Virus record (IMG/VR): IMGVR_UViG_3300027985_000843
Span: 248,001-312,000 of that record
Reading direction: 5' to 3' (one strand)
DNA length: 64,000 bases
Part shown: one piece after another, positions 953 to 27,700 of the stretch
Layout of the letters: the number at the start of each line of letters is the position of its first letter
Numbering within the stretch: the stretch's first letter is position 1
Notes under the pieces: generated by a model
Database searches by the model: none
Told to the model about the DNA's origin: nothing
What the model saw: the letters and a program-made list of their open reading frames with translations, nothing else
Position numbers and translations under genes: made by a program

Positions 953-1028
953 TGGTAGCCGGTGCGAGGATCGAACTCGCCTAGAACTGCTTGTAAAACA
1001 GCCACCGTCGCCAGACGGTTCACCGGCC
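953..1028 (-). tRNA. tRNA-Val(TAC), atypical D arm
   Basis: acceptor GGCCGGT/ACCGGCT, loop TTTACAA, T loop TTCGATC, CCA. Confidence 0.8.
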
Positions 1029-1550
1029 GTGAAGCACCTCCTGCACCCACAAGGTGTTGAGGCGGAGAATCTCCTCCCCGATGCGACGATTGATCTCTCG
1101 GTGGGCCTCGTACATACGGGGCGTAAACTTCCTGTATCGCAAGTGATCCATAGCGGTGCAATCATTCTTGACCCTAGCCCACCCCCACTTGGCGTCAACC
1201 TTCTGACCCCACAACAGAAGAGGCACCGCTTCATACCCGTCGTAGACGTAGTACGGGACGGGTTCGGGGATGCCCTTGAACGCCCGTCGACGGCCAATTT
1301 TACGGGCGATCCACCGAACGACGCAGAAGCCATACTCGCGATCCCGGCCACCAGCTCCATACTCGAAGCCGATACGGCACTTCCCACGGTCGTACACCAG
1401 CTCCTTCTCGGTGAGAGGGCCGTGGATGCCGGAGGTCTCCCAGCTCAAGCCCATGAAGGTGTGAAAGGGTCGGTAGTTCAGGCTCAAGAACTCGACCATC
1501 CTGGCCTGAGCCTTGCGACTCCGGCAGGGCACTGCGATGGCGTAGCCCAT
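1020..1550 (-). CDS. hypothetical protein
   Basis: 176 aa ORF, coupled to upstream gene. Confidence 0.6.
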   Translation of the reverse strand: MGYAIAVPCRSRKAQARMVEFLSLNYRPFHTFMGLSWETSGIHGPLTEKELVYDRGKCRIGFEYGAGGRDREYGFCVVRWIARKIGRRRAFKGIPEPVPYYVYDGYEAVPLLLWGQKVDAKWGWARVKNDCTAMDHLRYRKFTPRMYEAHREINRRIGEEILRLNTLWVQEVLHGR

Positions 1551-2160: not shown

Positions 2161-2265
2161 ATTTATCCCATTGTGCCCCAACCATCATTGGGAACACGAC
2201 CATCCATGAGGGGCGCCTCCCGCCTCGGGACATCGTGAATGCACTTGTGGTTCATATCACTTGAA

Positions 2266-3270
2266 ATGCAACGAATTCTGCTAGTAGAAGACAGCCCGTC
2301 GGACAGAGAAATCTTGAAGTACCTGCTCGAAGAGCAGTTCAAGAAGGAGGTCGTTCTACACGAAGCTCCGTCACTGTCCAAGGCAGTAGAGATTCTCGAC
2401 AAAGAGGGTATCGATTGTGTCGTGCTTGACCTTCAGCTGCCGGACTCCGCAGGTAAAGAGACGTTCCAAAAGCTGTACGCCAGGTACTCACACATCCCGT
2501 TCATCGTGATGACCAACAATAAGGACCGCTTGCTGGCCGTCGAGATGATCCAGCTCGGAGCCGCAGACTTCGTCCTGAAGAATTACACCGACGAGGAAGA
2601 CATCTTCCGACGCATCGTGTTCGCGATCGAAAAGCACAAGAGGAGCGTTCGGGTGGACCCTACTGAAGCGGACAGCTTCCGGCGCGTGTCGAGCGCCAAT
2701 TTCAGGTTGGTGCAAGCTCAGGAGGACGACGCTAGCCCCAGCACCATTCGGAACATCCAAGTCGAGACGACAGCAGCTGTTGCGGATCTGTCCCGCAAAA
2801 CGTTCGCGGCTCTCCAGGAGATCAACATCAGCTTCGCGAAGAACAACATGCAGTGGAGCGAGGTCGCGAAGACAGTTGCCATCCTCGACAAGGAGCTTCT
2901 CAGGGGGCATTCCAACAGGCCCAGCATGCGGTCGCAGATGGACCTGATGGACCATCGCATTCAGGTTCTCGAAGGCGAGGTCAACGGCTTGCAAGAAGAC
3001 GTCACCGAGACGAACATCACAGCCATCAAAGAGAACAACCAGACGGCTCGCACCAAACTGTCCATGTGGACCAAGCTGCTGATCGCGCTCCTGACCCTGC
3101 TCGGTGTTCTCGCCACCGCCGCCGCCACCTACTTCGCCGCCGCTGCCAACGCCAGCAAGAAGGAATACGAGTCCCTGAAGGACTACGACGCCTTGAGGGC
3201 GGCATCCACCGCTGCGGCACCGAAGAAAGCCCCGGCAACCCTAGACCCAAATCCAAAGAGTAGCAAATGA
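2266..3270 (+). CDS. response-regulator receiver fused to coiled coil and C-terminal TM segment
   Basis: ILLVEDS, VVLDLQLPDS (phospho-Asp), GAADFVLK; hydrophobic LLIALLTLLGVLATAAATYF. Confidence 0.85.
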   Translation: MQRILLVEDSPSDREILKYLLEEQFKKEVVLHEAPSLSKAVEILDKEGIDCVVLDLQLPDSAGKETFQKLYARYSHIPFIVMTNNKDRLLAVEMIQLGAADFVLKNYTDEEDIFRRIVFAIEKHKRSVRVDPTEADSFRRVSSANFRLVQAQEDDASPSTIRNIQVETTAAVADLSRKTFAALQEINISFAKNNMQWSEVAKTVAILDKELLRGHSNRPSMRSQMDLMDHRIQVLEGEVNGLQEDVTETNITAIKENNQTARTKLSMWTKLLIALLTLLGVLATAAATYFAAAANASKKEYESLKDYDALRAASTAAAPKKAPATLDPNPKSSK

Positions 3271-4418
3271 CTGACACCACGAGGCCCGTTCCGGAACCCC
3301 TCCCGGAATGCGACTACGACTATCAGTGCCCGCGAAGAGAGATTCTCAGCCGGCTGTACGGGATCATGAAGGCCATCCCCGATTCTGTGTTCGAGATCGA
3401 CAGAGAGGGGCGGCATCTGTTCGTGCATGCCAACGGGGATACCCCTACGGACCCAAGACGGATCAAGGGGATGACCCTTCAGGAGCTGCTACCCGAAGAC
3501 ATTGTCGAGCCCACCATGCAGGCCATTCAACAAGTCCTGGAGACGGGGCAAAACATGACCCTGGACTACTCCATCCCACCCGCCGAAGGCAGCGGCGGTC
3601 CGGTGAGGCACCTCCAGGCGCACCTAGGCCGAACGCCCAACATGACCGTCGTGGCGATCGTCCGAAATGTGTCTGACCTGGTCGAACACCAGAAGAAGCT
3701 CCTCGAAGCAAACCAAGCCCTCACCCAATTCACATCCCTCGTCTCCCACGACCTGCGAGAACCCCTCACCGGGATTGCAGGCTTCGCTACCCTGTTGCAA
3801 AACCGCTACGAGGGCGATCTCGACGAACGAGGCCAACACTTCCTGGACCGGATCGTGGAGGTGTCGAAGCAAATGGAGAAAAAGCTGGACGACCTTCTCG
3901 CTTTTTCAAAGGCCGGAAAGGAGACGCCCTTCGAGCCCTTCCCCTTCGGAGCCGCCGTAGAGGAGGCAAAACGAGCCCTAGTACGAAAAATCGCTACCAC
4001 TGGAACGCGCATCGAGATCGTCGGAGAGTTGCCAATCGTGCACGGGGATCGAAGTCTTATCGCTCAAGTCTTGCAGAATCTGTTTTCGAACTCGATCAAG
4101 TACAGACGGAAAGACGAGACGCCCCACATTACGATCGAGGTAACCTCTCACGACCTTCCCTTCTGGAAAGTTGCCGTGAAGGACAATGGTATCGGCTTCG
4201 ATATGCGACACCGGGACAAGATTTTTGGAGTTTTCCAGCGCCTGTACACGGTCGAGCAGTACCCTGGAACAGGAATCGGCCTCGCTATCGCACGCCGTAT
4301 CATCGAGCGCCATGGGGGAGACATCTGGCCTTGGTCCGAACCAGGAGCCGGAGCCACATTCTACTTCACTCTACCCAAACCGACGGTCGACGATCATGGT
4401 GGATATCCTGCTGGTTGA
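3267..4418 (+). CDS. PAS-domain sensor histidine kinase (HisKA + HATPase)
   Basis: SHDLREPL H-box, QNLFSNSIKY N-box, DNGIGF G1, GTGIGL G2. Confidence 0.95.
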   Translation: MTDTTRPVPEPLPECDYDYQCPRREILSRLYGIMKAIPDSVFEIDREGRHLFVHANGDTPTDPRRIKGMTLQELLPEDIVEPTMQAIQQVLETGQNMTLDYSIPPAEGSGGPVRHLQAHLGRTPNMTVVAIVRNVSDLVEHQKKLLEANQALTQFTSLVSHDLREPLTGIAGFATLLQNRYEGDLDERGQHFLDRIVEVSKQMEKKLDDLLAFSKAGKETPFEPFPFGAAVEEAKRALVRKIATTGTRIEIVGELPIVHGDRSLIAQVLQNLFSNSIKYRRKDETPHITIEVTSHDLPFWKVAVKDNGIGFDMRHRDKIFGVFQRLYTVEQYPGTGIGLAIARRIIERHGGDIWPWSEPGAGATFYFTLPKPTVDDHGGYPAG

Positions 4419-10195: not shown

Positions 10196-10270
10196 GGAGC
10201 CGGTGATGGGAATCGAACCCACAACTTCGTCCTTACCGAGGACGTGCTCTTCCAAATGAGCTTCACCGGC
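10196..10270 (-). tRNA. tRNA-Thr(GGT)
   Basis: cloverleaf, loop TCGGTAA. Confidence 0.9.
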
Positions 10271-10892
10271 GTAATTTATCCCAACGTTCGGCGGCATCCT
10301 CCCTGACCGTCATCTTCGACCTTCGACCTCGTACTTCGTCGAAAGTGAACACGTAGGCCGTGTCACTTTCGAAATCGTACCCTACGATGAAATCGAAGTC
10401 CGAAGCATCCAAGGGTCTAACACCCCACGCACCATCAGCACAGGTCACCTTGAACTCCGGCAACCCTCTGAGAGGGGCTGCCCACCGAACCTGCAACTTC
10501 TTCAAGCCTTTTGGGGTGCCCACCAACCAATCCACCCTGTCCCCATCGAACTCCGCTCGATAGACGTCAAAATCAAAAACAGCCAGTCTGAATAGCACTG
10601 CTGCCTCGGCGATCTTCATCTTCCGGCGTCTCTCGGAAGGGGACACTGATACAATCTGGGAAAACCCGGAAGGAGTCTCGCGGGCCTTTCTTCGAGTGCC
10701 CCCAGCTTTCAAGCTGCCCCGAACGATCTTTTCTCGTTTGAGATCGGTCGGCAACGGGAGGTCACGGAGCCAGCCACTCAGAGTCGCCTTAGGCACCCCA
10801 AGCAACCGATGGATTTCATTCAATGACAGGTGTTCATCTCGACGAAGCTCAACAGCTTTTGGCTTTAGGTGTAGGTAAGCGGCTTTTGGCAT
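10263..10892 (-). CDS. free-standing HTH + PD-(D/E)xK endonuclease (homing-endonuclease-like)
   Basis: SLNEIHRLLGVPKATLSGW HTH; RVDWLV...KKLQVR nuclease core; stop codon lies in 5' end of tRNA-Thr. Confidence 0.75.
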   Translation of the reverse strand: MPKAAYLHLKPKAVELRRDEHLSLNEIHRLLGVPKATLSGWLRDLPLPTDLKREKIVRGSLKAGGTRRKARETPSGFSQIVSVSPSERRRKMKIAEAAVLFRLAVFDFDVYRAEFDGDRVDWLVGTPKGLKKLQVRWAAPLRGLPEFKVTCADGAWGVRPLDASDFDFIVGYDFESDTAYVFTFDEVRGRRSKMTVREDAAERWDKLRR

Positions 10893-13102: not shown

Positions 13103-14269
<1,167 letters not shown>

Positions 14270-16946: not shown

Positions 16947-17022
16947 TGGTCGGGATGGTCGGACTCGAACCGACGATCTCCTGTCCCCCAGACAGGCGCC
17001 CTTGCCGCTAGGCTACACCCCG
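16947..17022 (-). tRNA. tRNA-Pro(GGG)
   Basis: cloverleaf, loop CTGGGGG, CCA. Confidence 0.95.
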
Positions 17023-17246
17023 TGGACCACGATGACCTTCCGACCTTCACCGGTCTTGCCTCCAGCCGGGAGAGCTAACGCCGTCGTGGCGGCGACCCAT
17101 CCGGGTCGGGATCTATCTTGATCCAGGGGGTTTGCCCTGAGGGGAAGGCCCCTGGAACGTGCGGCAACCAACCGCTTCTTCGTGAGGAGATCACGCCTCA
17201 CTAGCCACTGGTCAGGTGGCACGTTGTATTCGCCCCGAAGGGAGAA

Positions 17247-17389
17247 GGTCGGCCGTCCCGGAGTCGAACCGGATGCTTGTAAGGGTCGAAGGAGCTGCTT
17301 CCCTTGCGAGAAGCGAGGTACGACACTGGAAAGAGCTTTTGGCTCCAGCTCCTAAATGCTGGCGGGGGACCCTCCCCCTATGACGGCCA
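17247..17389 (-). ncRNA. tRNA-like RNA A with ~70-nt variable-arm domain (8-nt loop ATTTAGGA)
   Basis: acceptor, D hairpin, CCAGC/GCTGG arm, insert ending CTTACAAGC, T loop TTCGACT. Confidence 0.85.
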
Positions 17390-17444
17390 AGGGGCTTCGA
17401 CGTGTGATCCCACTCAACCCTGAAGTCAAATGCACGCCGAAGCT

Positions 17445-17555
17445 TGGTGGACCGCCCTGGAATTGAACCAGGTGTGCTTGTGAGAACCGCCGAGCAGCAT
17501 TGCCGAAGCAACGCGAGGTGGTGGTGCTGGTAAGTGGAATCCTATCCAGCGGCCC
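17445..17555 (-). ncRNA. tRNA-like RNA B: acceptor + T arm + family domain, no anticodon arm, encoded ACCA
   Basis: GGGCCGC/GCGGTCC-ACCA, UUCG-capped helix, CTCACAAGC, T loop TTCAATT. Confidence 0.8.
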
Positions 17556-17558
17556 ATT

Positions 17559-17580
17559 GCCCGTCTTTCCGGGCTGTCAC
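17559..17580 (-). ncRNA. GTGACRGC-hairpin motif copy 2
   Basis: GTGACA-GCCCG-GAAAGA-CGGGC, 3 nt before RNA B. Confidence 0.6.
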
Positions 17581-17674
17581 CTCAATCCCTCTGAATCTGC
17601 CAGGACTTCGAGGGTCGTCGAGGTTACGAGTTGGTGGTCCCCGTTACCACGCCATACCCACGTGCGAGAACCAG

Positions 17675-17814
17675 CGGGCCGCCCTGGATTCGAACCAGGT
17701 GTTGCTTGTAAGAGTCGTGAGGCAGCTCCCCTTTCAAGGAGCGAGGTACGACGCTGGAAAGAGCGTTGTGCTCCAGCTTAAGAGGCTGGTGGTCTGCCAT
17801 TGACCGTGCGGCCC
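17675..17814 (-). ncRNA. tRNA-like RNA C (anticodon CTT, Lys) with ~70-nt variable-arm domain
   Basis: GGGCCGC/GCGGCCC, D arm GGTC-AATGGCA-GACC, CCAGC-CTCTTAA-GCTGG, insert, CCTGG-TTCGAAT-CCAGG. Confidence 0.9.
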
Positions 17815-17922
17815 AAACGCCCCATTCTCTCGGCTCAGTCCCATGGCACCGTTTGTGGTCCGATGGCTACCTCGCCAAGACAGCGTGAGGCACGCTGTAG
17901 GAGTCGCGATCTCCTAAATTTT

Positions 17923-18085
17923 GAAGCACTCGATGGATACGCCTGGGTAGCTTTGATGCTTGCGCCTAATGCAAGTGCCTGTACCAGTTCGGCTACTCCG
18001 CCATTGAGCGGGCCTCGCGGCCCTGGTGGCGGAGGTGGGATTCGAACCCACATATGCGTGTAAGACGAGTCGAGCTGAGTGCTTC
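17923..18085 (-). ncRNA. circularly permuted family member P1 (Leu-TAG-like)
   Basis: order: GAAGCACTC...CTTACACGC, T arm, CTCCGCC-ACCA, 21-nt linker, GGCGGAG, D arm, CTTGC-ATTAGGC-GCAAG, ...GAGTGCTTC. Confidence 0.85.
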
Positions 18086-18228
18086 GGAGGGCCATCCTGG
18101 AGTTGAACCAGAGAGCTTGTAAGGGCTGCGTGGCAGCTCCCCGTGAAGGGAGCGAGGTGCAACACTGGGTGAGCGTTGTATGCTCCTCCGTGGAAGGGAG
18201 GTGAGGAACCGATCCTCTGTGATGGCCC
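18086..18228 (-). ncRNA. tRNA-like RNA D (anticodon TCC, Gly) with variable-arm domain
   Basis: GGGCCAT/ATGGCCC, CCTCC-CTTCCAC-GGAGG, insert ending CTTACAAGC, T loop TTCAACT. Confidence 0.85.
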
Positions 18229-18231
18229 GAA

Positions 18232-18253
18232 GCTCGTCTCTCCGAGCTGTCAC
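18232..18253 (-). ncRNA. GTGACRGC-hairpin motif copy 3
   Basis: GTGACA-GCTCG-GAGAGA-CGAGC, 3 nt before RNA D. Confidence 0.6.
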
Positions 18254-18396
18254 CCCGTCACGAAACTCGACCAAAGGTACACGCAGGTTTCCAATCTGCA
18301 TTGTCCTGGTGCCCCAGGACTGAACCAGAAGCAGAGTTAACTCGACACCGAGGTTGTGAGAAAGTGGAGGCGTTCGAGGCGAAGTGCTGGATTTTG

Positions 18397-18469
18397 ATGC
18401 TAGAGACAGGAATCGAACCTGTAACCAACGGCTTGATAGGCCGTAGCTCTACCTATGAGCTACTTTAGC
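18397..18469 (-). tRNA. tRNA with ATC anticodon (nominally Asp, A34) on a non-Asp body
   Basis: GCTAAAG/CTCTAGC, A73, ACGGC-CTATCAA-GCCGT, canonical D and T arms. Confidence 0.8.
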
Positions 18470-18499
18470 GTGTGAGCACGTCTGGGCTGAACGCCTTAG

Positions 18500-18640
18500 A
18501 GGGGAAGTCTGGAGTCGAACCAGATTTGGCTTGTAAGGGCTGCTTGGCTGTCTCCCTTTCGAGAGACGATGCGCAACACTGGAAGAGCTGTTTAGCTCCC
18601 GCTTTCCTGGCGGGTGGGGCACCGTGCCCCTAACTTCCCC
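18500..18640 (-). ncRNA. tRNA-like RNA E (loop CAGGAAA, A33) with variable-arm domain
   Basis: GGGGAAG/CTTCCCC, CCCGC/GCGGG arm, GAAA-capped helix, CTTACAAGC, T loop TTCGACT. Confidence 0.85.
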
Positions 18641-18748
18641 CGTGAGTCTTCGCTTTTCAGAGAACCTGGGGTTGTCACCAACCCGCACTCACTCTCTACA
18701 CCGGTCGAGCGAAGACGCTGTCAAAAATCGACCGGCGAGAGAAAAAAG

Positions 18749-19327
18749 TCAGAGGCGGCTCGCCCCGTTCTTGTGGGCGTAGAAGCCTACCTGTCGACCA
18801 TCCTCGATGAACTGCTGTACCGAGAAGGCCATGTAGCTCGATACGAGGGCAATGAACGGTAGGAACTCGCCACCCTCACAGGTAGCAGCCCCAGCCACGT
18901 CCTCGTCATCGATCTCGAAGTTGGCGTCCCACACGACCTGGCCGAACGTACCGTCGGGCGCGAGGGCACCATGCAGGCAGGGGGTGCCCGCCTTGCGGAC
19001 GAACTTCTGAACGGTTCGGCGAGCCTCCCCATTGTCCAAGCAGTCGAGCACAAGGTCAGCTCCACCAAGAAGCGCCTCGACGTTGTCTGAGACCATCTTG
19101 TGGGGATTCGTCTTGATCTTGAGCCCGAACAGGAACTGGAGACTCTGTGCGAGACCTAGGACCTTGTTCTTGCCCACCGACGGTTTGCCGTGGAACTGGG
19201 ACTTGACGTTCTTCTGCTCCACCCGGTCGAAGTCGATCAGGGTGAAGTCGGCGTCAAAGTTGCGAGCGAACTGCATGAAGTGGGATCCAAGGGCCCCGAC
19301 TCCTACCACAACGATCTTCATCTTCAT
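18749..19327 (-). CDS. ThiF/MoeB-family E1-like adenylating enzyme
   Basis: VGVGALGS, DFDRVEQKN, LDCLDN, candidate catalytic Cys in ATCEG. Confidence 0.9.
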   Translation of the reverse strand: MKMKIVVVGVGALGSHFMQFARNFDADFTLIDFDRVEQKNVKSQFHGKPSVGKNKVLGLAQSLQFLFGLKIKTNPHKMVSDNVEALLGGADLVLDCLDNGEARRTVQKFVRKAGTPCLHGALAPDGTFGQVVWDANFEIDDEDVAGAATCEGGEFLPFIALVSSYMAFSVQQFIEDGRQVGFYAHKNGASRL

Positions 19328-20268
19328 CCTTCCAAGTCCTTGTAAGACCTGCGACTGATAATTCTACCCATAGCAGAATCAGTGATTCCAAACTTTCGGG
19401 CCAGAGAGGCTTTTGTCCAACCTTCAGCAAAAAGACCACGTGCTTCCAATACTTGGTCGTCGGACAGCTTCCTGGATGGCTTCCAATTTGGCTCCCGAAC
19501 AAACCTTAACTTGTATAAACAACAAGCCGGGAGATGGTTCTCTACCAGGGACTTGAGCTTCACGGCCTCAGCTTTTGTGTTCACAGCTATCTTGAACTGT
19601 CCTGGTCGAACAGAGCTTTCCCGAACTACAGTACGTACACCCAGCGAGCCTAGCTTCTCGGAGAGTCGAGAGACACAACCCTCAGAAAAACCATCTGTGC
19701 AGAAAAATAACTGACCTTGTCGATCATAGGTACCGTCGCCTGCAAACCACTGAGCAACAGACAAGGGTGTCAAGACAAGGTCAGAGGGAACTATCTTCAC
19801 ACCCCTGGGGTACCACCTAGCCCGCTGAGTTTTGAACTCACTGTAACAAGGTGTATACAGCAAACGACCGCCCCGCCCATGAATGACACGATCACCCAAG
19901 CACTTGGACCGAGGTGGGACGGGAATGATGGCGGATTCACAACCGTGTTCTACAAGCAGCACAGTCAAAGAGTCCAACCAACCCAACCGAACACGGCCCT
20001 GCTCCAATCGAAGACTCCCCTTAGGGTCCAAGGAGCCATCCCCCAAAAGGACGCCTTCTAAGACCTGCGACACAAGGTCCCAGTCGGCTCGGTGCTCTCG
20101 ATCACCTAGATACCTTGCATTCTGTTCCTTAGAGGAACGTACGAGAACACCCGTCTTCTTCAAACGATTGAGAACATTCCATGTAGAGCAACCAAGTCGG
20201 CGAGCGATAGAGGACGCGCTCTCGCCCGACAGATAGGCTTCGGTCAAAGCTTGGTGATCCATGATCAA
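19324..20268 (-). CDS. free-standing LAGLIDADG homing endonuclease with terminal HTHs
   Basis: LEGVLLGDGSL and AQWFAGDG motifs; inserted between Ubl and E1. Confidence 0.85.
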   Translation of the reverse strand: MIMDHQALTEAYLSGESASSIARRLGCSTWNVLNRLKKTGVLVRSSKEQNARYLGDREHRADWDLVSQVLEGVLLGDGSLDPKGSLRLEQGRVRLGWLDSLTVLLVEHGCESAIIPVPPRSKCLGDRVIHGRGGRLLYTPCYSEFKTQRARWYPRGVKIVPSDLVLTPLSVAQWFAGDGTYDRQGQLFFCTDGFSEGCVSRLSEKLGSLGVRTVVRESSVRPGQFKIAVNTKAEAVKLKSLVENHLPACCLYKLRFVREPNWKPSRKLSDDQVLEARGLFAEGWTKASLARKFGITDSAMGRIISRRSYKDLEG

Positions 20269-20293
20269 AGCCTACCAAACGGTTTATTCGGTG

Positions 20294-20533
20294 TCAACCA
20301 AAAGGTGTTTTGGGCCTGACCATGATCCTGTTGGGCAGGTCCTCGGTCGCCGAGAACCGCTGGACCACGAAGTCCTTGAACTCGACGTCATCCGCAGCCG
20401 TGATGCCCTGGACGTCGCCGCCCGTGACTGCCTCTTGGGCCCACGCAAGGATCTGCGCGTCCGAAGCGTCGAATTCGACCTCGTCCTTCAGGTCACCGTT
20501 CTGACCGTTCCAAGTGATGTTGAGCAGTGCCAT
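20294..20533 (-). CDS. ubiquitin-like (beta-grasp) protein ending in Gly
   Basis: 79 aa, C-terminus RIMVRPKTPFG-stop, next to JAB and E1. Confidence 0.7.
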   Translation of the reverse strand: MALLNITWNGQNGDLKDEVEFDASDAQILAWAQEAVTGGDVQGITAADDVEFKDFVVQRFSATEDLPNRIMVRPKTPFG

Positions 20534-20569
20534 GTTGAGTTCTCCCTTCTCTGGTTCTACATCTCGTCC

Positions 20570-20938
20570 CTAGTACAGGGACAGCTCGTGAAGCTTCGCG
20601 GTCCAAGGAGGCCGCATGATCACGGGCAAGGACTTGTACGAGAGTCGATCACGACCGACCCAGTAAGTGTGGATGAAGACACTGTCTGCCCAGATCCACC
20701 AGTCAAGCCGGCGACCGAGGCCAGACTCAATCGCCGCAAAGGTTGTGATGTCCGTGAAGGATGGGCTCCCGAAGCCACTGGGATGACTATGAGCGAACCC
20801 TGATAGGTTGTCCCGGTTCGCCCAGATGATGTCCCAAAGGTCTTGCGAGTCAGGCAGGGCTCCCCCGGATCGATCGTTCGGGGTATGCCAGAAGAGAGGC
20901 TCTCCCCGAAGGTCAAGAAGTACGCCTGCTTCCCTCAT
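20570..20938 (-). CDS. JAB/MPN (JAMM) metallopeptidase, DUB-like
   Basis: N-terminal Glu, HSHP, PSFTD. Confidence 0.85.
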   Translation of the reverse strand: MREAGVLLDLRGEPLFWHTPNDRSGGALPDSQDLWDIIWANRDNLSGFAHSHPSGFGSPSFTDITTFAAIESGLGRRLDWWIWADSVFIHTYWVGRDRLSYKSLPVIMRPPWTAKLHELSLY

Positions 20939-21138
20939 GACGGTAGTTGTTCCGAGTTCGGCTGCTTGGACTTGATCCAGGCATAGGCAATGTCGCCCAC
21001 CGGAGGCTGGTCACGAGCCCACTGCTTGAGTGAGATCCTGCCGCCTGTCTCGGCCTTCCACTTGCGGATCATCCGACGCCTATCGGAGCGACCCACGCCT
21101 GTGTACTTCTCTTCCATCTTCATCTCCTCAGTGAACAT
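20935..21138 (-). CDS. small basic hypothetical protein
   Basis: 67 aa, overlaps both neighbours in the operon. Confidence 0.55.
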   Translation of the reverse strand: MFTEEMKMEEKYTGVGRSDRRRMIRKWKAETGGRISLKQWARDQPPVGDIAYAWIKSKQPNSEQLPS

Positions 21139-22069
21139 GACGGAACACCACGAGGGCGTTCGTGTCCTGCGCTTCCAGGATGACTGAGGGCAGAGACTCT
21201 AGAGTGAACCAAGTGTCTCCCCTTGTCCCCCTGTTAAAGTCCCTGCTGTCGTATTCAGCAGTCAGGCAGATGCCGGAGTCGATGATCCGAAGGGAGCTAT
21301 CGCAAGTGCATTCGAACCGTCGACCGTTGAGGCGAAAACGAACGATGTGCTCGTTGGCGTTGTACCCGTTGCGGTGGTCGATAAGCTGGGCACCACCAAC
21401 AGCCAAAGCTGCCCGGACACCCTCCTCGAAATCCTCAAACGCCAAGAGTCGTCGACCCTCACTCGTGCCAATCCGTTCGATGGCCCGCTGACGGCGCTCT
21501 TCCGCCTCCCGACGCTTGCGGTCTTCTTCCCGACGCCTCACTTCCTCGGCCCGCCACCAGCATTCAACCTGGAAGGTGGCATCAAGGGCAGGGGTAACCC
21601 CCGGGATGTCGTTCACGCTCTTGGACTCGTCCAGGAACGCCTGTAGAACGGCCTCCTCAGGCCCCGTAGGAAACTCTTGGTTCTCGAAGATGAACGGGCC
21701 ATCCTCGTAGAACTGTCCCACGGACACACGCACGAACTTGTCTAGGCCGGGCTCTACGAGATGAGCCCGACGAAAGTTCTTGACGATGGCCTCGATCTTG
21801 GGCTCAACACGAGCTGCATTCTCGGGAACGAACAAGTCCCCGACGAGGTAGCCCCTCTGGGTGTTCCGAAGAGCACCCATGGGGGCTTCCACCGACTTCT
21901 CCCAAGTGGCCTTGCGGCCTTCGAGGCGGAACTGGTGCCACCCGTGTTCGGGTGGCCGACGCCCCTTGAGCTTCCAGGTGCGATCGAAGGTACGGATGGA
22001 CCCCTCGCCTACCCACGGTGTGACAAGCGAGCTGTCCTCATTGGTCTGCAAGAGGTCCTTCCAACCCAT
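21128..22069 (-). CDS. hypothetical protein, C-terminal domain possibly E2-like
   Basis: 313 aa; charged helix then ...IIDSGICL... resembling the E2 G.ICL active-site segment (function inferred). Confidence 0.7.
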   Translation of the reverse strand: MGWKDLLQTNEDSSLVTPWVGEGSIRTFDRTWKLKGRRPPEHGWHQFRLEGRKATWEKSVEAPMGALRNTQRGYLVGDLFVPENAARVEPKIEAIVKNFRRAHLVEPGLDKFVRVSVGQFYEDGPFIFENQEFPTGPEEAVLQAFLDESKSVNDIPGVTPALDATFQVECWWRAEEVRRREEDRKRREAEERRQRAIERIGTSEGRRLLAFEDFEEGVRAALAVGGAQLIDHRNGYNANEHIVRFRLNGRRFECTCDSSLRIIDSGICLTAEYDSRDFNRGTRGDTWFTLESLPSVILEAQDTNALVVFRHVH

Positions 22070-22077
22070 GTATCACC

Positions 22078-23952
22078 TCACGCCGCAATGGCCCATGCAG
22101 GCTTGCGGAGGATCTCCGTGTTGAGGATCTGTTCCACGAGGCTGACACGCGGGGCGGCCTTGGGAACTCCACCTGTCACCTGGCCCACCGGAGTGGCAGC
22201 GATGAGTGCGCGGACGGTACGCGGGATTGCGTATGGGTCCTTGAACACCTCTTCGTCGACACGGAAGCACGGAATGTTAAGTGCGGCTGCCGCTTCCTGT
22301 ACCACGTGATAGCCGCTGTTGCCCAGGCGAAGCAATCCGAAGGCCGTCGGGTTGATGCCCGATGTCTGAACCGCGTTGACCAGCTGAGTAGGGCCACCGA
22401 AGTCCTCTTCGTCTCCGATGAAGATGAAGATCGCGTCAGTGCCGTCAGCAGGCTTGATCTTGCTCAGGGCCTTGACGCCGGCCGCGTACGAAGTACCGCC
22501 TCCGGCACGGATGCCGAAGAAGGCTTGACGCACACCCGCAGACGATGCCTTCTTGATTGCGATCTCGCGACCGACGGTGTTGAAGATCGCGACGTGGATC
22601 TTGTCGAGCGGAAAGCTGCCGACGAACTTCTCGACATACTGCTTGGCGGCCTCGATGGCAGGGCCCATCGAGCTGGAGACGTCGACGAAGAAGTAAGGCT
22701 CGATACCCTTGACCTCTTCCTCGACAGCCTTCTGAGCTGCCGCGTCAGCCGCGTTTTCGAGCTGTTCCTTCAGTTCCTTCGACTTGACGTTGCGGGCCAG
22801 ATTCGCAGCACGCTGGTCCTCCGCCTGCTTCGTCGCCGTCTCCCACCGCTGCCGGATGTCCTGGACCTTGAGCAGGCCCAACTCTTCGAGCGTTGGAGTG
22901 AGGATGATCAAGTCCTTGTCGGACACGCTCTTGGCCTCGATGGCCGCCGCCATGATGGCACGGGTCAGACCCATGTTCTTCGGGAGGCGCCCCGTGAGGA
23001 GCTTGAAGCTCGGCTTGCCTTGGATGATCTTCTCGCACACTTGCTCTTCGGTCAGGCCCTCCCAAGAGTCTTCCTTGGAGAAGTCCTCGCCGATGCCGAT
23101 GGTCCGACGACCATCGTCAGCTTGCTTCTGCGTCCAGCCCAGGATCTCGTAGAACTTCGAGGTCGACGGCTTGTAGCCCGAGCACTTGGCGAGCTTGATG
23201 ACCGTCTTCTTGAAGCCGGCCTTGGCGAGCCCCTCCAGCAAGGGAAGATTGTCCTCCCGATGCTTGAGCCACTGCCGAACCACCTTCGACCAACGACCGA
23301 GGAACGGCTTGCGAGCGGAACGCCCGAACCCGAGTTCGCGGTTGATCTTCGCAATCCCGTCCAAGCACAGAACGTCGTGGATGCGCATGAGGAGCTTGGC
23401 GTCCAGATGCCGACGGTCCTTGCGGATGTGCAGGCACATGGCCTCACCAACCTCGCGGAAGTCCTCATCGAGGAACGTCTCGTCCTCGTCGCGGATGGGG
23501 TCTCCCTTACGGCTCTGGACCAGCATGAAGGCCGCGAGGATGACCTTCAGGTCCTTGTGCTCCTGAGGGTAGGCGAACGACGCCCAGCGGGCCGCGAATT
23601 CGTTGTCCAAGGCCCACACGTCAGCCACCTGCTGGTACATCCACGTGGCGACCTCCGGGAAGATGCCAGGCTTCTGGTATCGTCCGAGCTTCCGGCGGTC
23701 GTCGCTCCGAACCGTGCCATCCTCCCAGAGCTGACCGACCTTCTGGTTGGCCTTGCCCTTGGTCACGAGGTAGACGACCTTTTTGCCGTCCTCCACCTTG
23801 TGCGTGCAATACTGCCACTTCACACCCACCACCGAACTCGCGTCGGTGGACACGAACCCAGGACGGTTGTGGACCGCGTGGCCGGAGTAGTTGATGAGGG
23901 TGTTGATGACCTTCTCAGCAGGTCCCAGTGTCTCGTTGGCTACCATTTTCAT
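22078..23952 (-). CDS. TROVE-like helical domain + vWA domain (divergent Ro60/Rsr-like)
   Basis: vWA MIDAS FFVDVSSSM, GGGT, FIFIGDEE; upstream helical region with GRWSKVVRQW resembling the Ro60 segment (TROVE call moderate). Confidence 0.75.
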   Translation of the reverse strand: MKMVANETLGPAEKVINTLINYSGHAVHNRPGFVSTDASSVVGVKWQYCTHKVEDGKKVVYLVTKGKANQKVGQLWEDGTVRSDDRRKLGRYQKPGIFPEVATWMYQQVADVWALDNEFAARWASFAYPQEHKDLKVILAAFMLVQSRKGDPIRDEDETFLDEDFREVGEAMCLHIRKDRRHLDAKLLMRIHDVLCLDGIAKINRELGFGRSARKPFLGRWSKVVRQWLKHREDNLPLLEGLAKAGFKKTVIKLAKCSGYKPSTSKFYEILGWTQKQADDGRRTIGIGEDFSKEDSWEGLTEEQVCEKIIQGKPSFKLLTGRLPKNMGLTRAIMAAAIEAKSVSDKDLIILTPTLEELGLLKVQDIRQRWETATKQAEDQRAANLARNVKSKELKEQLENAADAAAQKAVEEEVKGIEPYFFVDVSSSMGPAIEAAKQYVEKFVGSFPLDKIHVAIFNTVGREIAIKKASSAGVRQAFFGIRAGGGTSYAAGVKALSKIKPADGTDAIFIFIGDEEDFGGPTQLVNAVQTSGINPTAFGLLRLGNSGYHVVQEAAAALNIPCFRVDEEVFKDPYAIPRTVRALIAATPVGQVTGGVPKAAPRVSLVEQILNTEILRKPAWAIAA

Positions 23953-24048
23953 CTATCCTTTCAAGCACTTGTGCTGTCCCCACTGTGAGGACGATGTGTG
24001 CCGTCTGGAGAAAACCTTCAAGCATGGATGGATCTCGTAGAAAAAGAA

Positions 24049-24113
24049 TGGTCGGGATGACCGGAATCGAACCGGCATGACCTTCGACCCAAACGAAGTG
24101 GGTTCCCGTTACC

Positions 24114-25575: not shown

Positions 25576-25646
25576 AGCGGGTGACGGGAATCGAACCCGC
25601 ACCTGGAGATTGGCAACCTCCTGCTCGACCTTCGAGCTACACCCGC
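25576..25646 (-). tRNA. tRNA-Gly(GCC)
   Basis: cloverleaf, loop TTGCCAA, U73. Confidence 0.95.
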
Positions 25647-25652
25647 AATTCG

Positions 25653-25796
25653 AGGCATCCGAGAAGAAGGGCTGTGAGTGCTTACGCACGGATTTTCTGT
25701 CCGCTGCTCATCCGATTGAGCTGTCTCCCCATAAGTGGCGGGGAGAGTAGGAGTCGAACCTACAATTGCTTGTGAGACCTTCACGGCTGGATGCCT
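25653..25796 (-). ncRNA. circularly permuted family member P2 (Phe-GAA-like, A33)
   Basis: AGGCATCC...GAAGG-TCTCACAAGC, T arm, TCTCCCC-GCCA, CTTAT linker, GGGGAGA, D arm, GCGGA-CAGAAAA-TCCGT, ...CCTTC-TTCTC-GGATGCCT. Confidence 0.85.
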
Positions 25797-25884
25797 TGGT
25801 GCCGGGAGGGGGATTCGAACCCCCACGCCCACTATGGAGCACCAGTTCCTGAAACTGGCGTGTCTACCATTCCACCACCCCGGC
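25797..25884 (-). tRNA. tRNA-Leu(CAG)
   Basis: loop TTCAGGA, long variable arm, CCA. Confidence 0.95.
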
Positions 25885-27084: not shown

Positions 27085-27588
27085 CTAGTCCTGTCGGGTT
27101 GTCAAAGGTCGCGTGGTAGATCCCTCTACCAGGAAAAACTTCTTCAAGGGTCGCCGACGATACTTCTTCTTGATGTTCCGTCCAGCGAAGGTTGTGGTCT
27201 GAGAGTGACAGTTCGGGCAAAGAAGTCGCAGGTTCTCAATCCTATTGTCTCGACGATCTCCGTTCATGTGGTCGATCTGAAGCACCAGCGACTTACCAAG
27301 CCACTCTGTCAAACCGCACTGACTGCACTGGTCTTCGACTTTGCCTGTCTTCAAGAGGCGTTTCTTGAGCCAAACACCACTGACCACCGGCCCGACTACA
27401 AAAACCTCCTCATCCTTATATAGCCGCAGTTTTCGACACTTCAGGTCGCCTCTCTCTACTGCGGCATCCCATTGACCTCTCGTGAGTGAGAAAGCAGTTG
27501 CTGTGGCTCGACTGGAGTAACCCTCATCGTAATGCCTTTGGACAGCTTCCCAGTCCACATCCCTTGACTTGATCTCCACGTTCGCCAT
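27085..27588 (-). CDS. free-standing HNH homing endonuclease
   Basis: CSQC...LQIDHMNGDRRDNRIENLRLLCPNCH. Confidence 0.9.
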   Translation of the reverse strand: MANVEIKSRDVDWEAVQRHYDEGYSSRATATAFSLTRGQWDAAVERGDLKCRKLRLYKDEEVFVVGPVVSGVWLKKRLLKTGKVEDQCSQCGLTEWLGKSLVLQIDHMNGDRRDNRIENLRLLCPNCHSQTTTFAGRNIKKKYRRRPLKKFFLVEGSTTRPLTTRQD

Positions 27589-27627
27589 TTCCTGTTGAGT
27601 TCTGATAAACAGATCAGGAAACGGTAG

Positions 27628-27700
27628 ATGGGACGGTGGGATTCGAACCCACAACCGCCTGGATCAGAGCCAGGTGCACAGCCAATTGTGCTACGTCCCA
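27628..27700 (-). tRNA. tRNA-Gln(CTG)
   Basis: T1-A72, loop CTCTGAT. Confidence 0.95.

What the first reader, a model, noticed from the sequence alone, without database searches (positions are those of the whole stretch)
17923..18085. Circularly permuted member P1 (Leu-TAG-like), opened at the tip of the inserted helix
SEEN: in transcript order the 3' half comes first (GAAGCACTC-AGCTCG-ACTCGT-CTTACACGC-ATAT, T arm GTGGG-TTCGAAT-CCCAC, CTCCGCC-ACCA). A 21-nt linker with hairpin GGGCC-GCGA-GGCCC follows. Then comes the 5' half: GGCGGAG, D arm, CTTGC-ATTAGGC-GCAAG, agcatcaaagct-acccag-gcgtatc-catc-GAGTGCTTC. The ends GAAGCACTC/GAGTGCTTC form a perfect 9-bp helix exactly where linear copies have the tetraloop hairpin. 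ESTABLISHED: permuted tRNA genes are known from some algae and archaea, two-piece tmRNA from some bacteria, and YrlA Y RNAs have a permuted tRNA-like domain closed by a Ro60-binding terminal stem. INFERENCE: linear and permuted forms of one RNA coexisting here could be the intermediates linking tRNA to Y-RNA-type topology. RNase P plus 3' trimming at the encoded CCA would give a two-piece tRNA.
Basis: partly seen in the sequence, partly recalled or inferred. Interest (0 to 1): 0.92.

Follow-up and report, generated by a model that had tools for sequence, protein, structure and literature searches.

The report
Permuted tRNA-like Y-RNA-type phage RNA
This is a real, conserved small RNA of a huge bacteriophage, a tRNA look-alike whose two halves are encoded in swapped order and closed by a long conserved stem; it belongs to a large undescribed family that sits beside a Ro60-like protein gene and most resembles bacterial Y RNAs rather than a working tRNA.

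Summary
Minus strand 18085..17923 reads: closing-stem strand, T arm, 3' acceptor strand, ACCA, 21-nt hairpin linker, 5' acceptor strand, D arm, anticodon arm, closing-stem strand.

It is neither chance nor a mis-join. A covariance model built only from 42 relatives in other phage contigs finds it full length at 110.5 bits (E about 2e-30). All six helices show compensatory changes, with 94.8% of cells paired against 65.6% in shuffles.

At least 57 full-length members lie in 41 of 70 related huge-phage loci. The window holds a second one at 25651-25798 (-).

The constant part of the family is the long arm (terminal stem, internal loop with 3' CUCG, junction ACAnGCA), not the tRNA-like head. Anticodon loops are degenerate. 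In many relatives the acceptor is closed by only 2-6 nt, so a charged two-piece tRNA is not the family's function.

The RNAs cluster on the same strand beside a conserved 620-aa helical-plus-VWA protein. Its closest structural and language-model neighbours are TROVE/Ro60 proteins, but homology of the helical part is unproven.

Best reading: a new, divergent Y-RNA-like (YrlA-like) ribonucleoprotein family of huge phages.

The parts
17922..18086 (-). P1, the whole permuted tRNA-like RNA (the finding)
   Evidence: Full-length match to the independent model R2, 110.5 bits, E 1.8e-30. MFE fold z = -3.98.
18077..18085 (-). 5' strand of the terminal (closing) stem, GAAGCACUC
   Evidence: Pairs with 17923-17931. 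In the family this helix is 95.8% paired, and all 9 pairs show changes on both sides.
18052..18076 (-). 5' side of the arm: internal loop, inner-stem strand, conserved junction CUUACACGCA plus a 3-nt spacer
   Evidence: ACA.GCA is invariant or nearly so in 28 and in 42 aligned members. The inner stem is 87.6% paired.
18035..18051 (-). T arm GUGGG-UUCGAAU-CCCAC
   Evidence: The helix is 100% paired in the family.
18024..18034 (-). 3' acceptor strand CUCCGCC followed by ACCA
   Evidence: NCCA follows the acceptor in 12 of 28 members. Linear tRNA genes of the window encode CCA in 21 of 45 cases.
18003..18023 (-). 21-nt linker with hairpin GGGCC-GCGA-GGCCC
   Evidence: Hairpin linkers with different sequences occur in relatives, e.g. 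L004 GGCUCC/GGGGCC and L003 GGUCC/GGACC.
17996..18002 (-). 5' acceptor strand GGCGGAG
   Evidence: Pairs with 18028-18034. In the family the helix is 94.1% paired, and all 7 pairs show changes on both sides.
17977..17993 (-). D arm GCC-GAACUGGUACA-GGC
   Evidence: The helix is 97.6% paired.
17959..17975 (-). Anticodon-like arm CUUGC-AUUAGGC-GCAAG (UAG, Leu-like loop)
   Evidence: The stem is 94.7% paired in the family with 5 of 5 pairs co-varying. The loop is not conserved among relatives.
17923..17958 (-). 3' side of the arm: A-rich junction, CCAG, inner-stem strand, AUCG (family consensus CUCG), terminal-stem strand GAGUGCUUC
   Evidence: C-U-C are invariant and the following G nearly so (at least 90%) in the 42-member alignment. 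P1 has AUC-G.
25651..25798 (-). P2, the second permuted member, with a 9-nt linker GCCACUUAU
   Evidence: R2 100.7 bits, E 1.3e-27. It lies exactly between tRNA-Leu(cag), whose CCA ends at 25797, and tRNA-Gly(gcc), which starts at 25646.
17247..18640 (-). Cluster of five 'linear' arm-bearing tRNA-like RNAs around P1 (about 18640-18497, 18232-18088, 17814-17675, 17555-17443, 17391-17247). They carry the same arm, capped by a tetraloop, in the variable region.
   Evidence: 17675-17814 is an Rfam tRNA hit of 43.2 bits with a ~70-nt insert in the variable region.
22078..23952 (-). 624-aa helical-repeat plus C-terminal VWA protein, the candidate Ro60-like partner
   Evidence: Pfam finds VWA only. 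Top Foldseek PDB hits are TROVE/Ro60. ESM Atlas: 67 of 100 named hits are TROVE clusters. hhalign gives 92.6% to a TROVE profile, but this is VWA-driven. RNA family members lie beside homologues of this gene in 3 of 3 independently chosen sister-family loci.
18749..22069 (-). Genes between the VWA gene and the RNA cluster: 313-aa unknown (21128-22069), 67-aa (20935-21138), JAB/JAMM-like (20570-20938), 79-aa ubiquitin-like candidate ending in Gly (20294-20533), LAGLIDADG endonuclease (19324-20268), ThiF/E1-like (18749-19327)
   Evidence: The same block lies between the VWA gene and the P1-type RNA in L001, L003 and L004. Whether it belongs to the RNA's function is unknown.

Best explanation
P1 is one gene of a previously undescribed family of structured non-coding RNAs of huge (about 200-600 kb) bacteriophages.

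Each member has two modules. The first is a tRNA-like head. The second is a conserved long arm: a terminal stem of 9 bp or more, an internal loop with an almost invariant 3' CUCG, a 5-bp inner stem, and the junction YUACAnGCA leading into the T arm.

In P1 and P2 the RNA ends lie in the arm, and the acceptor stem is closed by a linker. This is the topology of bacterial and phage YrlA-type Y RNAs. In the neighbouring 'linear' copies the arm is capped and the acceptor is open.

Most likely mechanism (inferred):
1. The RNAs are co-transcribed with the tRNA array.
2. They are released by the tRNA-processing cuts of their neighbours. P2 lies exactly between the CCA of one tRNA and the +1 of the next.
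3. They act as Y-RNA-like scaffolds. The arm binds the phage's own Ro60-like helical-plus-VWA protein, encoded within 4 kb on the same strand. The tRNA-like head engages tRNA-recognising proteins such as modification or processing enzymes, nucleases or translation factors.

Shown: the structure, its conservation, the family, the constant arm with a variable head, and the linkage to the protein gene. Inferred: binding, processing and the cellular role.
For: Structure and family:
- Fold and coordinates.
- 28-member alignment: 21 of 25 predicted pairs have compensatory changes.
- 57 full-length members: 95.8% of cells paired against 65.7% in shuffles, 444 double changes, and slide controls of 36-49%.
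- Six-helix structure on a plain MAFFT alignment of 42 non-window members: 94.8% paired against 65.6% in shuffles, and 31 of 34 pairs with double changes.
- The independent model finds P1 at 110.5 bits and P2 at 100.7 bits.

Y-RNA likeness:
- The only non-tRNA Rfam family matching P1 and P2 is YrlA, on the permuted core.
- A genuine Bxz1 YrlA next to its Ro gene scores only 32.5 bits.
- The Rfam YrlA consensus has the same plan of a two-part terminal stem with an internal loop.

Arm constant, head variable:
- Linkers range from 2 to 31 nt, plus one of 105 nt.
- Degenerate anticodon loops: about 91% of 7-nt loops in ordinary tRNAs of the same loci are canonical, against about 44% in permuted members and about 32% in linear-insert members (a crude parser).
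- L090 and L120 carry tandem members that keep the arm but lack parts of the tRNA head.

Protein link:
- All 57 members are on the strand of the VWA gene.
- An RNA-first scan found a locus (L090) where a 25%-identical homologue lies about 100-300 nt upstream of four such RNAs.
- In a protein-first test on three loci of that sister family, full-length RNA hits of 87-92 bits lay 42 nt to 0.9 kb from the gene on the same strand in 3 of 3.

Ro60 likeness of the protein:
- Top Foldseek PDB hits are 9kop (TROVE domain), 2i91 and 1yvr (Ro60), with 9l5y (phage Ro60) also listed; they align over 527-566 columns.
- A TROVE phage protein and a DUF2828 protein appear among the viral hits.
- ESM Atlas named neighbours are mostly TROVE.
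- The merged family profile against a TROVE profile gives 92.6%.
- The only Pfam hit of the L090 homologue is vWA_Ro60, at E 0.1.
Against: - No Pfam TROVE match for any of 17 family members, even at E up to 10.
- The helical domain alone gives no Ro60-specific signal. Foldseek finds only generic ARM/HEAT repeats at E above 0.6, and hhalign of the N-terminal parts gives 0.1-0.9%. The Ro60 similarity may therefore rest on the VWA domain and the overall architecture.
- TM-scores to Ro60 are low, 0.22-0.28.
- tblastn with Bxz1 Ro finds nothing in the window or in 77 loci.
- P1 lacks the YrlA 5' motif GNCGAAN0-1G.
- The family model recognises only the tRNA core of Bxz1 YrlA, at 15 bits, so the arms are not detectably homologous to YrlA.
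- Unlike YrlA, P1 keeps a full anticodon arm, and the terminal stem leaves from the variable region.
- Most loci were collected through the VWA gene, so linkage in those is partly by construction. The independent tests involve one plus three loci.
- No expression, binding or processing data exist.
Confidence: 0.6

Rival explanations
1. P1 is a true circularly permuted tRNA-Leu(UAG) gene. RNase P cuts at G18002, the 3' end is trimmed to the encoded CCA at 18024, and the two pieces, held together by the arm, act as a chargeable two-piece tRNA. Alternatively, the ends are ligated as in algal and archaeal permuted tRNAs.
For: - P1 itself has a 7-bp acceptor, A73-CCA, a single-stranded 7-nt stretch before G+1, and a canonical 7-nt loop AUUAGGC that shares UUAGGC with the window's tRNA-Leu(tag).
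- NCCA follows the acceptor in 12 of 28 members, as often as in the phage's real tRNA genes, where it is 21 of 45.
- The phage encodes EF-Tu.
- M. smegmatis YrlA is cut by RNase P and gets CCA in vivo (PMC4201824).
Against: - Many relatives close the acceptor with 2-6 nt, including UUCG.
- Relatives at the same position after the ThiF gene have other, often non-canonical loops of 6-9 nt.
- The conserved part is the arm, which a decoder would not need.
- The termini form a roughly symmetric internal loop, not a bulge-helix-bulge motif.
- No splicing endonuclease or RNA ligase was found among the window proteins scanned.
- The window already has an ordinary tRNA-Leu(tag).
Confidence: 0.1
2. The RNAs are tRNA mimics that work without the VWA protein. 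For example, they could be decoys or sponges for host tRNA-targeting defence nucleases or tRNA-binding enzymes, with the arm serving only for stability or for recognition by some other factor.
For: - Their location is inside a 45-gene tRNA array.
- Their tRNA-like heads are diverse, with altered anticodon loops.
- There are several copies per genome.
- Ro60 homology of the neighbouring protein is not proven.
Against: - The most conserved part is the arm, with a near-invariant internal loop. This points to a dedicated ligand rather than to stability alone.
- Members that have lost much of the tRNA head still keep the arm.
- Linkage to the protein family is tight and on the same strand in both lineages.
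Confidence: 0.18
3. P1 is a by-product of tandem duplication in the array: the 3' part of one arm-bearing pseudo-tRNA fused to the 5' part of the next. It would be a cis-acting processing signal of the polycistronic tRNA transcript, with no function as a separate RNA.
For: - The permuted order is exactly what two tandem linear copies give, and the linker looks like CCA plus a spacer.
- The family model also gives artefactual hits across a T arm and the next tRNA.
- P1 abuts linear member B.
Against: - The terminal stem and the closed acceptor co-vary in 56 distinct sequences from many phages. This requires selection on the permuted fold itself.
- True members score 60-129 bits, against 20-50 bits for the tandem artefacts.
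Confidence: 0.05

Closest known systems
YrlA-type bacterial and phage Y RNAs (Rfam RF02553; Chen et al. 2014, PMC4201824)
   Same: - The gene order is T arm, closed acceptor-like stem-loop, D arm.
- The 5' and 3' ends pair in a long two-part stem with an internal loop.
- It is encoded within about 4 kb of, and on the same strand as, a helical-plus-VWA protein gene.
- There are several different RNAs per locus (compare YrlA and YrlB).
- A 7-bp acceptor with possible RNase P cutting has a precedent in M. smegmatis YrlA.
- Some relatives (L040) carry GCCGAGAUG where Bxz1 YrlA has GCCGAGAG.
   Different: - P1 keeps a complete anticodon arm, and its terminal stem leaves from the variable region, not from the anticodon position.
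- P1 has no GNCGAAN0-1G motif.
- The scores are far below Rfam's threshold, and the arms are not recognised reciprocally.
- The partner protein has no TROVE Pfam match and carries an extra N-terminal beta domain.
- Linear, permuted and a third topology coexist, in arrays of up to six.
Deinococcus radiodurans Yrn1 Y RNA
   Same: According to PMC4201824 it can be drawn with a T arm and a 5-bp 'anticodon arm' as well as the Ro-binding terminal stem. It is therefore a Y RNA that retains an anticodon-like hairpin.
   Different: Yrn1 has no clear D arm, a 6-nt loop and a different arm order. No sequence comparison was made here.
Circularly permuted tRNA genes of Cyanidioschyzon merolae and some archaea
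   Same: The 3' half is encoded upstream of the 5' half, joined across the acceptor ends. The break point coincides with an insertion site used in linear paralogues.
   Different: Those genes have a bulge-helix-bulge motif at the termini and are circularised by the splicing machinery to give ordinary decoding tRNAs (background knowledge). Here there is no such motif, the loops are degenerate, the acceptors are often capped, and the 'insert' is the conserved part.
Two-piece (permuted) tmRNA
   Same: A bacterial-type RNA with a permuted tRNA-like domain, whose acceptor ends are made by processing.
   Different: ARAGORN, which detects permuted tmRNA, reports none here. There is no tag reading frame and no pseudoknot region, and the RNA is only 163 nt long.
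Class II tRNAs (Leu, Ser, Tyr) with a long variable arm
   Same: An extra helix emerges between the anticodon and T stems. P1's loop and A73 are Leu-like.
   Different: The arm here is 25-35 nt per strand with a conserved internal loop. It is shared by heads of many 'identities', and it can carry the RNA's ends.

Membership tests
YrlA / Y RNA-like (RF02553) | Permuted tRNA-like core: T arm, then a closed acceptor-like stem-loop, then the D arm | tested here: met
   Sequence and fold. The YrlA model aligns its positions 30-81 to 17977-18052(-). The helices co-vary in the family.
YrlA / Y RNA-like (RF02553) | 5' and 3' ends pair in a terminal stem interrupted by an internal loop (the Ro60-binding module) | tested here: met
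   A 9-bp terminal stem, an internal loop and an inner stem in P1. In the family, 9 of 9 terminal pairs and 4 of 5 inner pairs have compensatory changes. The Rfam consensus has the same plan. Whether the stem binds Ro60 is untested.
YrlA / Y RNA-like (RF02553) | Conserved 5' motif GNCGAAN0-1G (PMC4201824) | tested here: not met
   The 5' strand of P1 reads GAAGCACUCAGCUCGACUCGUC and has no match. The family consensus is CC-A.CAG or CC-(C/A)GCCGAG. Only some relatives (L040: GCCGAGAUG) resemble Bxz1's GCCGAGAG.
YrlA / Y RNA-like (RF02553) | Score at or above Rfam's gathering threshold (69 bits) | tested here: not met
   P1 scores 20.5 bits and P2 23.4 bits, on the core only. The known Bxz1 YrlA reaches only 32.5 bits, so the threshold is narrow.
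YrlA / Y RNA-like (RF02553) | Encoded within about 4 kb of a Ro60 (TROVE) gene on the same strand | tested here: inconclusive
   P1 starts 3,992 nt after the end of the 624-aa gene, and P2 ends 1.7 kb before its start; both are on the same strand. The protein is Ro60-like by Foldseek, ESM Atlas and a full-length profile comparison. It is not Ro60-like by Pfam TROVE, tblastn or the helical-domain-only tests.
YrlA / Y RNA-like (RF02553) | Terminal stem occupies the anticodon-arm position of the tRNA-like domain | tested here: not met
   P1 has a separate 5-bp, 7-nt-loop anticodon arm one nucleotide after the D stem. The terminal arm lies between that arm and the T arm.
YrlA / Y RNA-like (RF02553) | Bound by Ro60; carries tRNA-type modifications | not testable with these tools
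   This needs immunoprecipitation and modification mapping.
Circularly permuted tRNA genes (algal and archaeal type) | 3' half upstream of 5' half, joined by a short intervening sequence | tested here: met
Circularly permuted tRNA genes (algal and archaeal type) | Bulge-helix-bulge motif formed by the transcript's termini | tested here: not met
   The termini form a stem, a roughly symmetric internal loop of about 4-8 nt per side, and a second stem. There are no 3-nt bulges four base pairs apart.
Circularly permuted tRNA genes (algal and archaeal type) | Product is an ordinary decoding tRNA (conserved canonical anticodon loop, free acceptor end) | tested here: not met
   P1's own loop is canonical. 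However, relatives at the same position after the ThiF gene have other loops, many of 6-9 nt or lacking U33, and many acceptors are capped by 2-6 nt.
Two-piece tmRNA | Tag reading frame and pseudoknots; detected by ARAGORN | tested here: not met
   ARAGORN finds no tmRNA in the window. Only about 36 nt follow the anticodon arm.
tRNA (RF00005) | Colinear cloverleaf recognised by tRNA models | tested here: not met
   Neither ARAGORN nor the Rfam tRNA model reports 17923-18085. Of the linear arm-bearing neighbours, only 17675-17814 is reported, at 43.2 bits.

The most novel reading that the evidence does not exclude
The arm-bearing tRNA-like RNAs and the Ro60-like VWA protein form a new kind of phage ribonucleoprotein. 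In it, members with an encoded CCA and a hairpin linker, such as P1, would really be opened by RNase P. This would yield aminoacylatable or CCA-ended two-piece tRNA mimics tethered to the protein. They might possibly feed the adjacent ubiquitin-like / E1 / JAB module or the phage's own EF-Tu. That would be a tRNA-Y RNA hybrid with a catalytic or translational role, rather than a passive scaffold.
Probability: 0.1. Interest if true: 0.93.

Novelty: new variant of a known kind. Interest (0 to 1): 0.72.

Why it matters
Y RNAs and Ro60 are conserved from bacteria to humans, yet their bacterial and viral roles are poorly understood. The route from tRNA to Y RNA has only been guessed at.

- This family shows linear, permuted and further topologies of one RNA side by side in single genomes. 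That makes the 'permutation by tandem duplication' route directly visible and testable.
- It suggests that huge phages, which already carry tRNAs, EF-Tu and aminoacyl-tRNA synthetases, also carry their own multi-RNA Ro-like particle.
- It gives more than 80 natural sequence variants of a compact protein-binding arm for structural work.
- These RNAs are missed by tRNA finders and by Rfam. In the one related GenBank phage record (Rctr197k) the element lies in unannotated sequence.

Tried and rejected
- Megablast of 17000-24000 against 50,697 phage records gave no match. The only annotated relative was found through the protein (Rctr197k, 54% identity).
- Ro60 by direct sequence: tblastn of Bxz1 Ro against the window and 77 loci gave nothing. 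hhalign of the 17-member alignment against the single Bxz1 Ro sequence gave 5%. A profile search of PDB sequences found VWA domains only.
- Folding the helical part alone and searching the PDB gave only generic solenoids.
- PHROGs and Pfam on the 313-aa and 67-aa neighbours gave nothing. The ESM Atlas search on the 313-aa protein gave no usable lead.
- Self-cleaving ribozymes or other Rfam families in the arm: nothing at E up to 10 in 17000-24100 apart from tRNA, YrlA and one weak group II fragment.
- K-turn and bulge-helix-bulge readings of the arm's internal loop were rejected on inspection of 57 sequences.
- A first MAFFT alignment was too imprecise to test the inner and anticodon stems. 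A second alignment of 42 sequences resolved them.
- Literature searches for permuted tRNA-like RNAs in phages found no description of this family.
- The promoter scan around P1 found no sigma-70-like site. It found one terminator-like hairpin at the end of the ThiF gene (18766-18752, minus strand), which says little about the transcription unit.
Full report
**Context**

The window is part of IMGVR_UViG_3300027985_000843, a 371,739-bp viral contig of about 59% G+C. Its first 28 kb carry 45 tRNA genes found by ARAGORN, all on the minus strand. Interspersed are a phage EF-Tu, a thymidine kinase, homing endonucleases and a two-component pair. No nucleotide match exists among 50,697 deposited phages. 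The only annotated relative is the metagenomic 'Virus Rctr197k'.

**The observation**

- closing strand GAAGCACUC;
- a 25-nt stretch containing CUUACACGC;
- the T arm;
- CUCCGCC-ACCA;
- a 21-nt linker with the hairpin GGGCC-GCGA-GGCCC;
- GGCGGAG;
- the D arm;
- the anticodon arm with loop AUUAGGC;
- an A-rich stretch, then GAGUGCUUC.

The minimum-free-energy fold contains all these helices at -63.9 kcal/mol, z = -3.98. Five neighbouring 'linear' tRNA-like RNAs carry the same arm, capped by a tetraloop, in their variable region. One of them is an Rfam tRNA hit with a ~70-nt insert. A second permuted copy, P2, lies at 25651-25798(-).

**It is a conserved family, not chance or a mis-join**

- A simple scan looked for a T arm whose following 7 nt pair with a 7-mer a few bases downstream. 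It found the same arrangement in related phage loci.
- 28 members align with ACA.GCA before the T arm and UCG near the 3' end invariant. 21 of 25 RNAalifold pairs show compensatory changes.
- A covariance model found 57 full-length members (E below 1e-9) in 41 of 70 loci, all on the strand of the VWA gene. On that alignment 95.8% of cells pair against 65.7% after shuffling, with 444 double changes. Sliding the partners by 1-3 columns drops pairing to 36-49%.
- To avoid circularity I aligned 42 members from other contigs with MAFFT alone and wrote a six-helix structure: terminal 9 bp, inner 5, T 5, closed acceptor 7, D 3, anticodon 5. Pairing was 94.8% against 65.6%, and 31 of 34 pairs had double changes.
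- The model built from that alignment finds P1 at 17922-18086(-) with 110.5 bits, E 1.8e-30, full length. It finds P2 at 100.7 bits. All other window hits are the expected artefacts of a T arm followed by the next tRNA (20-44 bits).
- An exact-pattern scan of 2.9 million viral contigs for CTTACAAGCA plus a T loop gave only 41 stretches, mostly on contigs over 100 kb. About 26 more full-length members were among them.

**What is conserved, and what that says about function**

The constant part is the arm:
- a terminal stem ending in CC/GG;
- an internal loop, 5' A.CAG or (C/A)GCCGAG and 3' (C)ACUC-G;
- a 5-bp inner stem closed by C-G and U-A;
- the junction YUACAnGCA.

The head varies.
- The linker closing the acceptor is 2-31 nt, and 105 nt in one case. 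It includes UC, UUCG, GAAU, GCUC and AUUA, or NCC(A/G) plus a co-varying hairpin as in P1.
- NCCA follows the acceptor in 12 of 28 members. That is as often as CCA is encoded in the window's real tRNA genes, 21 of 45.
- The 'anticodon' stem co-varies, but its loop is not conserved among relatives at the same position after the ThiF gene and is often 6, 8 or 9 nt or lacks U33. With a crude parser, about 91% of 7-nt loops in ordinary tRNAs of the same loci are canonical. The figure is about 44% for permuted members and about 32% for linear arm-bearing members.
- In a sister lineage, tandem members keep the arm but lose the T arm or acceptor, or place the arm at the acceptor position.

A decoder would conserve the opposite features. 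The family is therefore a non-decoding tRNA mimic whose essential module is the arm.

**Comparison with Y RNAs**

- Rfam's only non-tRNA match to P1 and P2 is YrlA, on the T / closed-acceptor / D core, at 20.5 and 23.4 bits against a threshold of 69.
- The threshold is not decisive. The YrlA of mycobacteriophage Bxz1, 190 nt upstream of its annotated Ro gene, scores only 32.5 bits.
- The Rfam consensus shows the same overall plan of a two-part terminal stem with an internal loop carrying GGCGAAUG. Bxz1 has GCCGAGAG at that place, and three relatives of P1 have GCCGAGAUG. P1 does not.
- My family model recognises only the core of Bxz1 YrlA, at 15 bits.
- P1 differs in topology too. It keeps a full anticodon arm, and the terminal stem leaves from the variable region.
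- Chen et al. report that M. smegmatis YrlA has a 7-bp acceptor, is cut by RNase P in vitro, and is cut and given CCA in vivo (PMC4201824).

**The neighbouring protein**

The 624-aa gene at 22078-23952(-) has more than 1,500 homologues at 55-80% identity on contigs up to 0.6 Mb. Pfam sees only a C-terminal VWA domain. The AlphaFold model (pLDDT 72) has an N-terminal beta domain, a helical region 97-411 and VWA 415-583.

Evidence for a Ro60 (TROVE) relationship:
- The best Foldseek PDB matches are the TROVE domain 9kop and Ro60 entries 2i91 and 1yvr, and the Thermus phage Ro60 9l5y is also listed. They align over 527-566 columns, but TM is only 0.22-0.28.
- Viral matches include a TROVE phage protein and a DUF2828 protein.
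- In the ESM Atlas, 67 of the 100 nearest named clusters are TROVE.
- A profile of this family merged with its sister family matches a TROVE profile at 92.6% over 305 columns.
- The sister-family member on L090 has vWA_Ro60 as its only Pfam hit, at E 0.1.

Evidence against:
- There is no TROVE Pfam hit.
- tblastn finds nothing.
- The helical parts alone give nothing specific by Foldseek or hhalign.

I rate a true TROVE relationship at about 55-60%. The architecture (solenoid plus C-terminal VWA) is shared in any case.

**Linkage of RNA and protein**

P1 begins 3,992 nt after the end of the gene and P2 ends 1.7 kb before its start; both are on the same strand. P1-type members sit just after the ThiF gene in many relatives.

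Those loci were collected through the protein, so I looked for independent tests.
- The RNA-first scan produced L090. There a 25%-identical homologue (E 3e-19) ends about 100 nt before four tandem arm-bearing RNAs.
- I then took three proteins of that sister family without knowing their surroundings. Full-length RNA hits of 87.5, 90.4 and 92.3 bits lay 42 nt after, 41 nt before and 0.75 kb before the gene, on the same strand, with further weaker copies beside them.

That is the pattern described for rsr and its Y RNAs.

**Maturation (inferred)**

- P2's terminal stem starts directly after the CCA of tRNA-Leu(cag) and ends 6 nt before the first base of tRNA-Gly(gcc).
- P1's stem starts 2-3 nt after the discriminator of linear member B.

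The ordinary 3' and RNase P cuts of the flanking tRNAs would thus release these RNAs from an array transcript. No sigma-70-like promoter was found nearby. A terminator-like hairpin sits at the end of the ThiF gene.

**Verdict**

P1 is a member of a new, large, structurally validated family of permuted and linear tRNA-like RNAs of huge phages. It most likely acts as the RNA partner of a divergent Ro60-like protein. The proposal that it matures into a chargeable two-piece tRNA-Leu is not supported by the comparative data, but it is not excluded for P1 itself. Rfam 15 has no model for the family, and no description was found in the literature searched.

Noticed in passing
window 18749-20938 (-): A ubiquitin-like conjugation set lies between the VWA gene and the RNA cluster. 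It comprises a JAB/JAMM-like protein with the motif HSHPSGFGSPSFTD (20570-20938), a 79-aa protein ending ...PKTPFG (20294-20533) and a 192-aa ThiF/E1-like protein (18749-19327). A free-standing LAGLIDADG endonuclease gene (19324-20268) is inserted between the last two. ThiF recurs about 3.5 kb downstream of the Ro-like gene in the sister lineage too (L120, L122).
   Followed up: partly
window 13103-14269 (-): A complete EF-Tu gene (all three Pfam domains, E 6e-52) lies inside the tRNA array. A relative (L003) carries a HisRS fragment, and L004 also carries EF-Tu.
   Followed up: no
window 2239-4418 (+): A response-regulator receiver protein (343 aa) and a PAS-HisKA-HATPase histidine kinase (383 aa) are encoded on the opposite strand within the tRNA array. 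This would be a phage-borne two-component pair.
   Followed up: no
window 18398-18469 (-): A well-formed tRNA (Rfam 67.3 bits) with the unusual anticodon AUC ('tRNA-Asp(atc)' by ARAGORN) sits between two arm-bearing tRNA-like RNAs.
   Followed up: no
window 953-1042 (-): ARAGORN's 'tRNA-???' with a 2-base anticodon contains UUUACAAGC before its T arm. It looks like a short or degenerate relative of the arm-bearing family.
   Followed up: partly
L120 7866-8873 (+); L090 2306-2879 (+): These are arrays of six and four tandem arm-bearing RNAs directly after the Ro-like gene. Some have a third topology (arm, then D arm, anticodon arm and T arm, with no separate acceptor stem). Others have only one or two hairpins in place of the tRNA head.
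   Followed up: partly
L004 16213-16457 (+): This permuted member has a 105-nt structured insertion as the linker between its acceptor strands, instead of the usual 2-31 nt.
   Followed up: no
L003 8297-8461 and L004 7185-7349 (+): These two P2-type relatives are almost identical, but their anticodon-like loops read UUUCAAA (UCA) and UUCCAAA (CCA). That is the pair expected for a Trp tRNA and an opal suppressor. It may be coincidence, given the degenerate loops elsewhere.
   Followed up: no
L005 21681-21820 (Rctr197k, KX853510 about 175.5 kb): The family member in the only related GenBank phage record lies in unannotated sequence between a hypothetical CDS and tRNA-Met.
   Followed up: yes
window 10263-10892 (-), 27085-27654 (-): A PD-(D/E)XK endonuclease-like gene and an HNH endonuclease gene are interspersed among the tRNA genes. 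They are probably homing endonucleases that shape the array.
   Followed up: no
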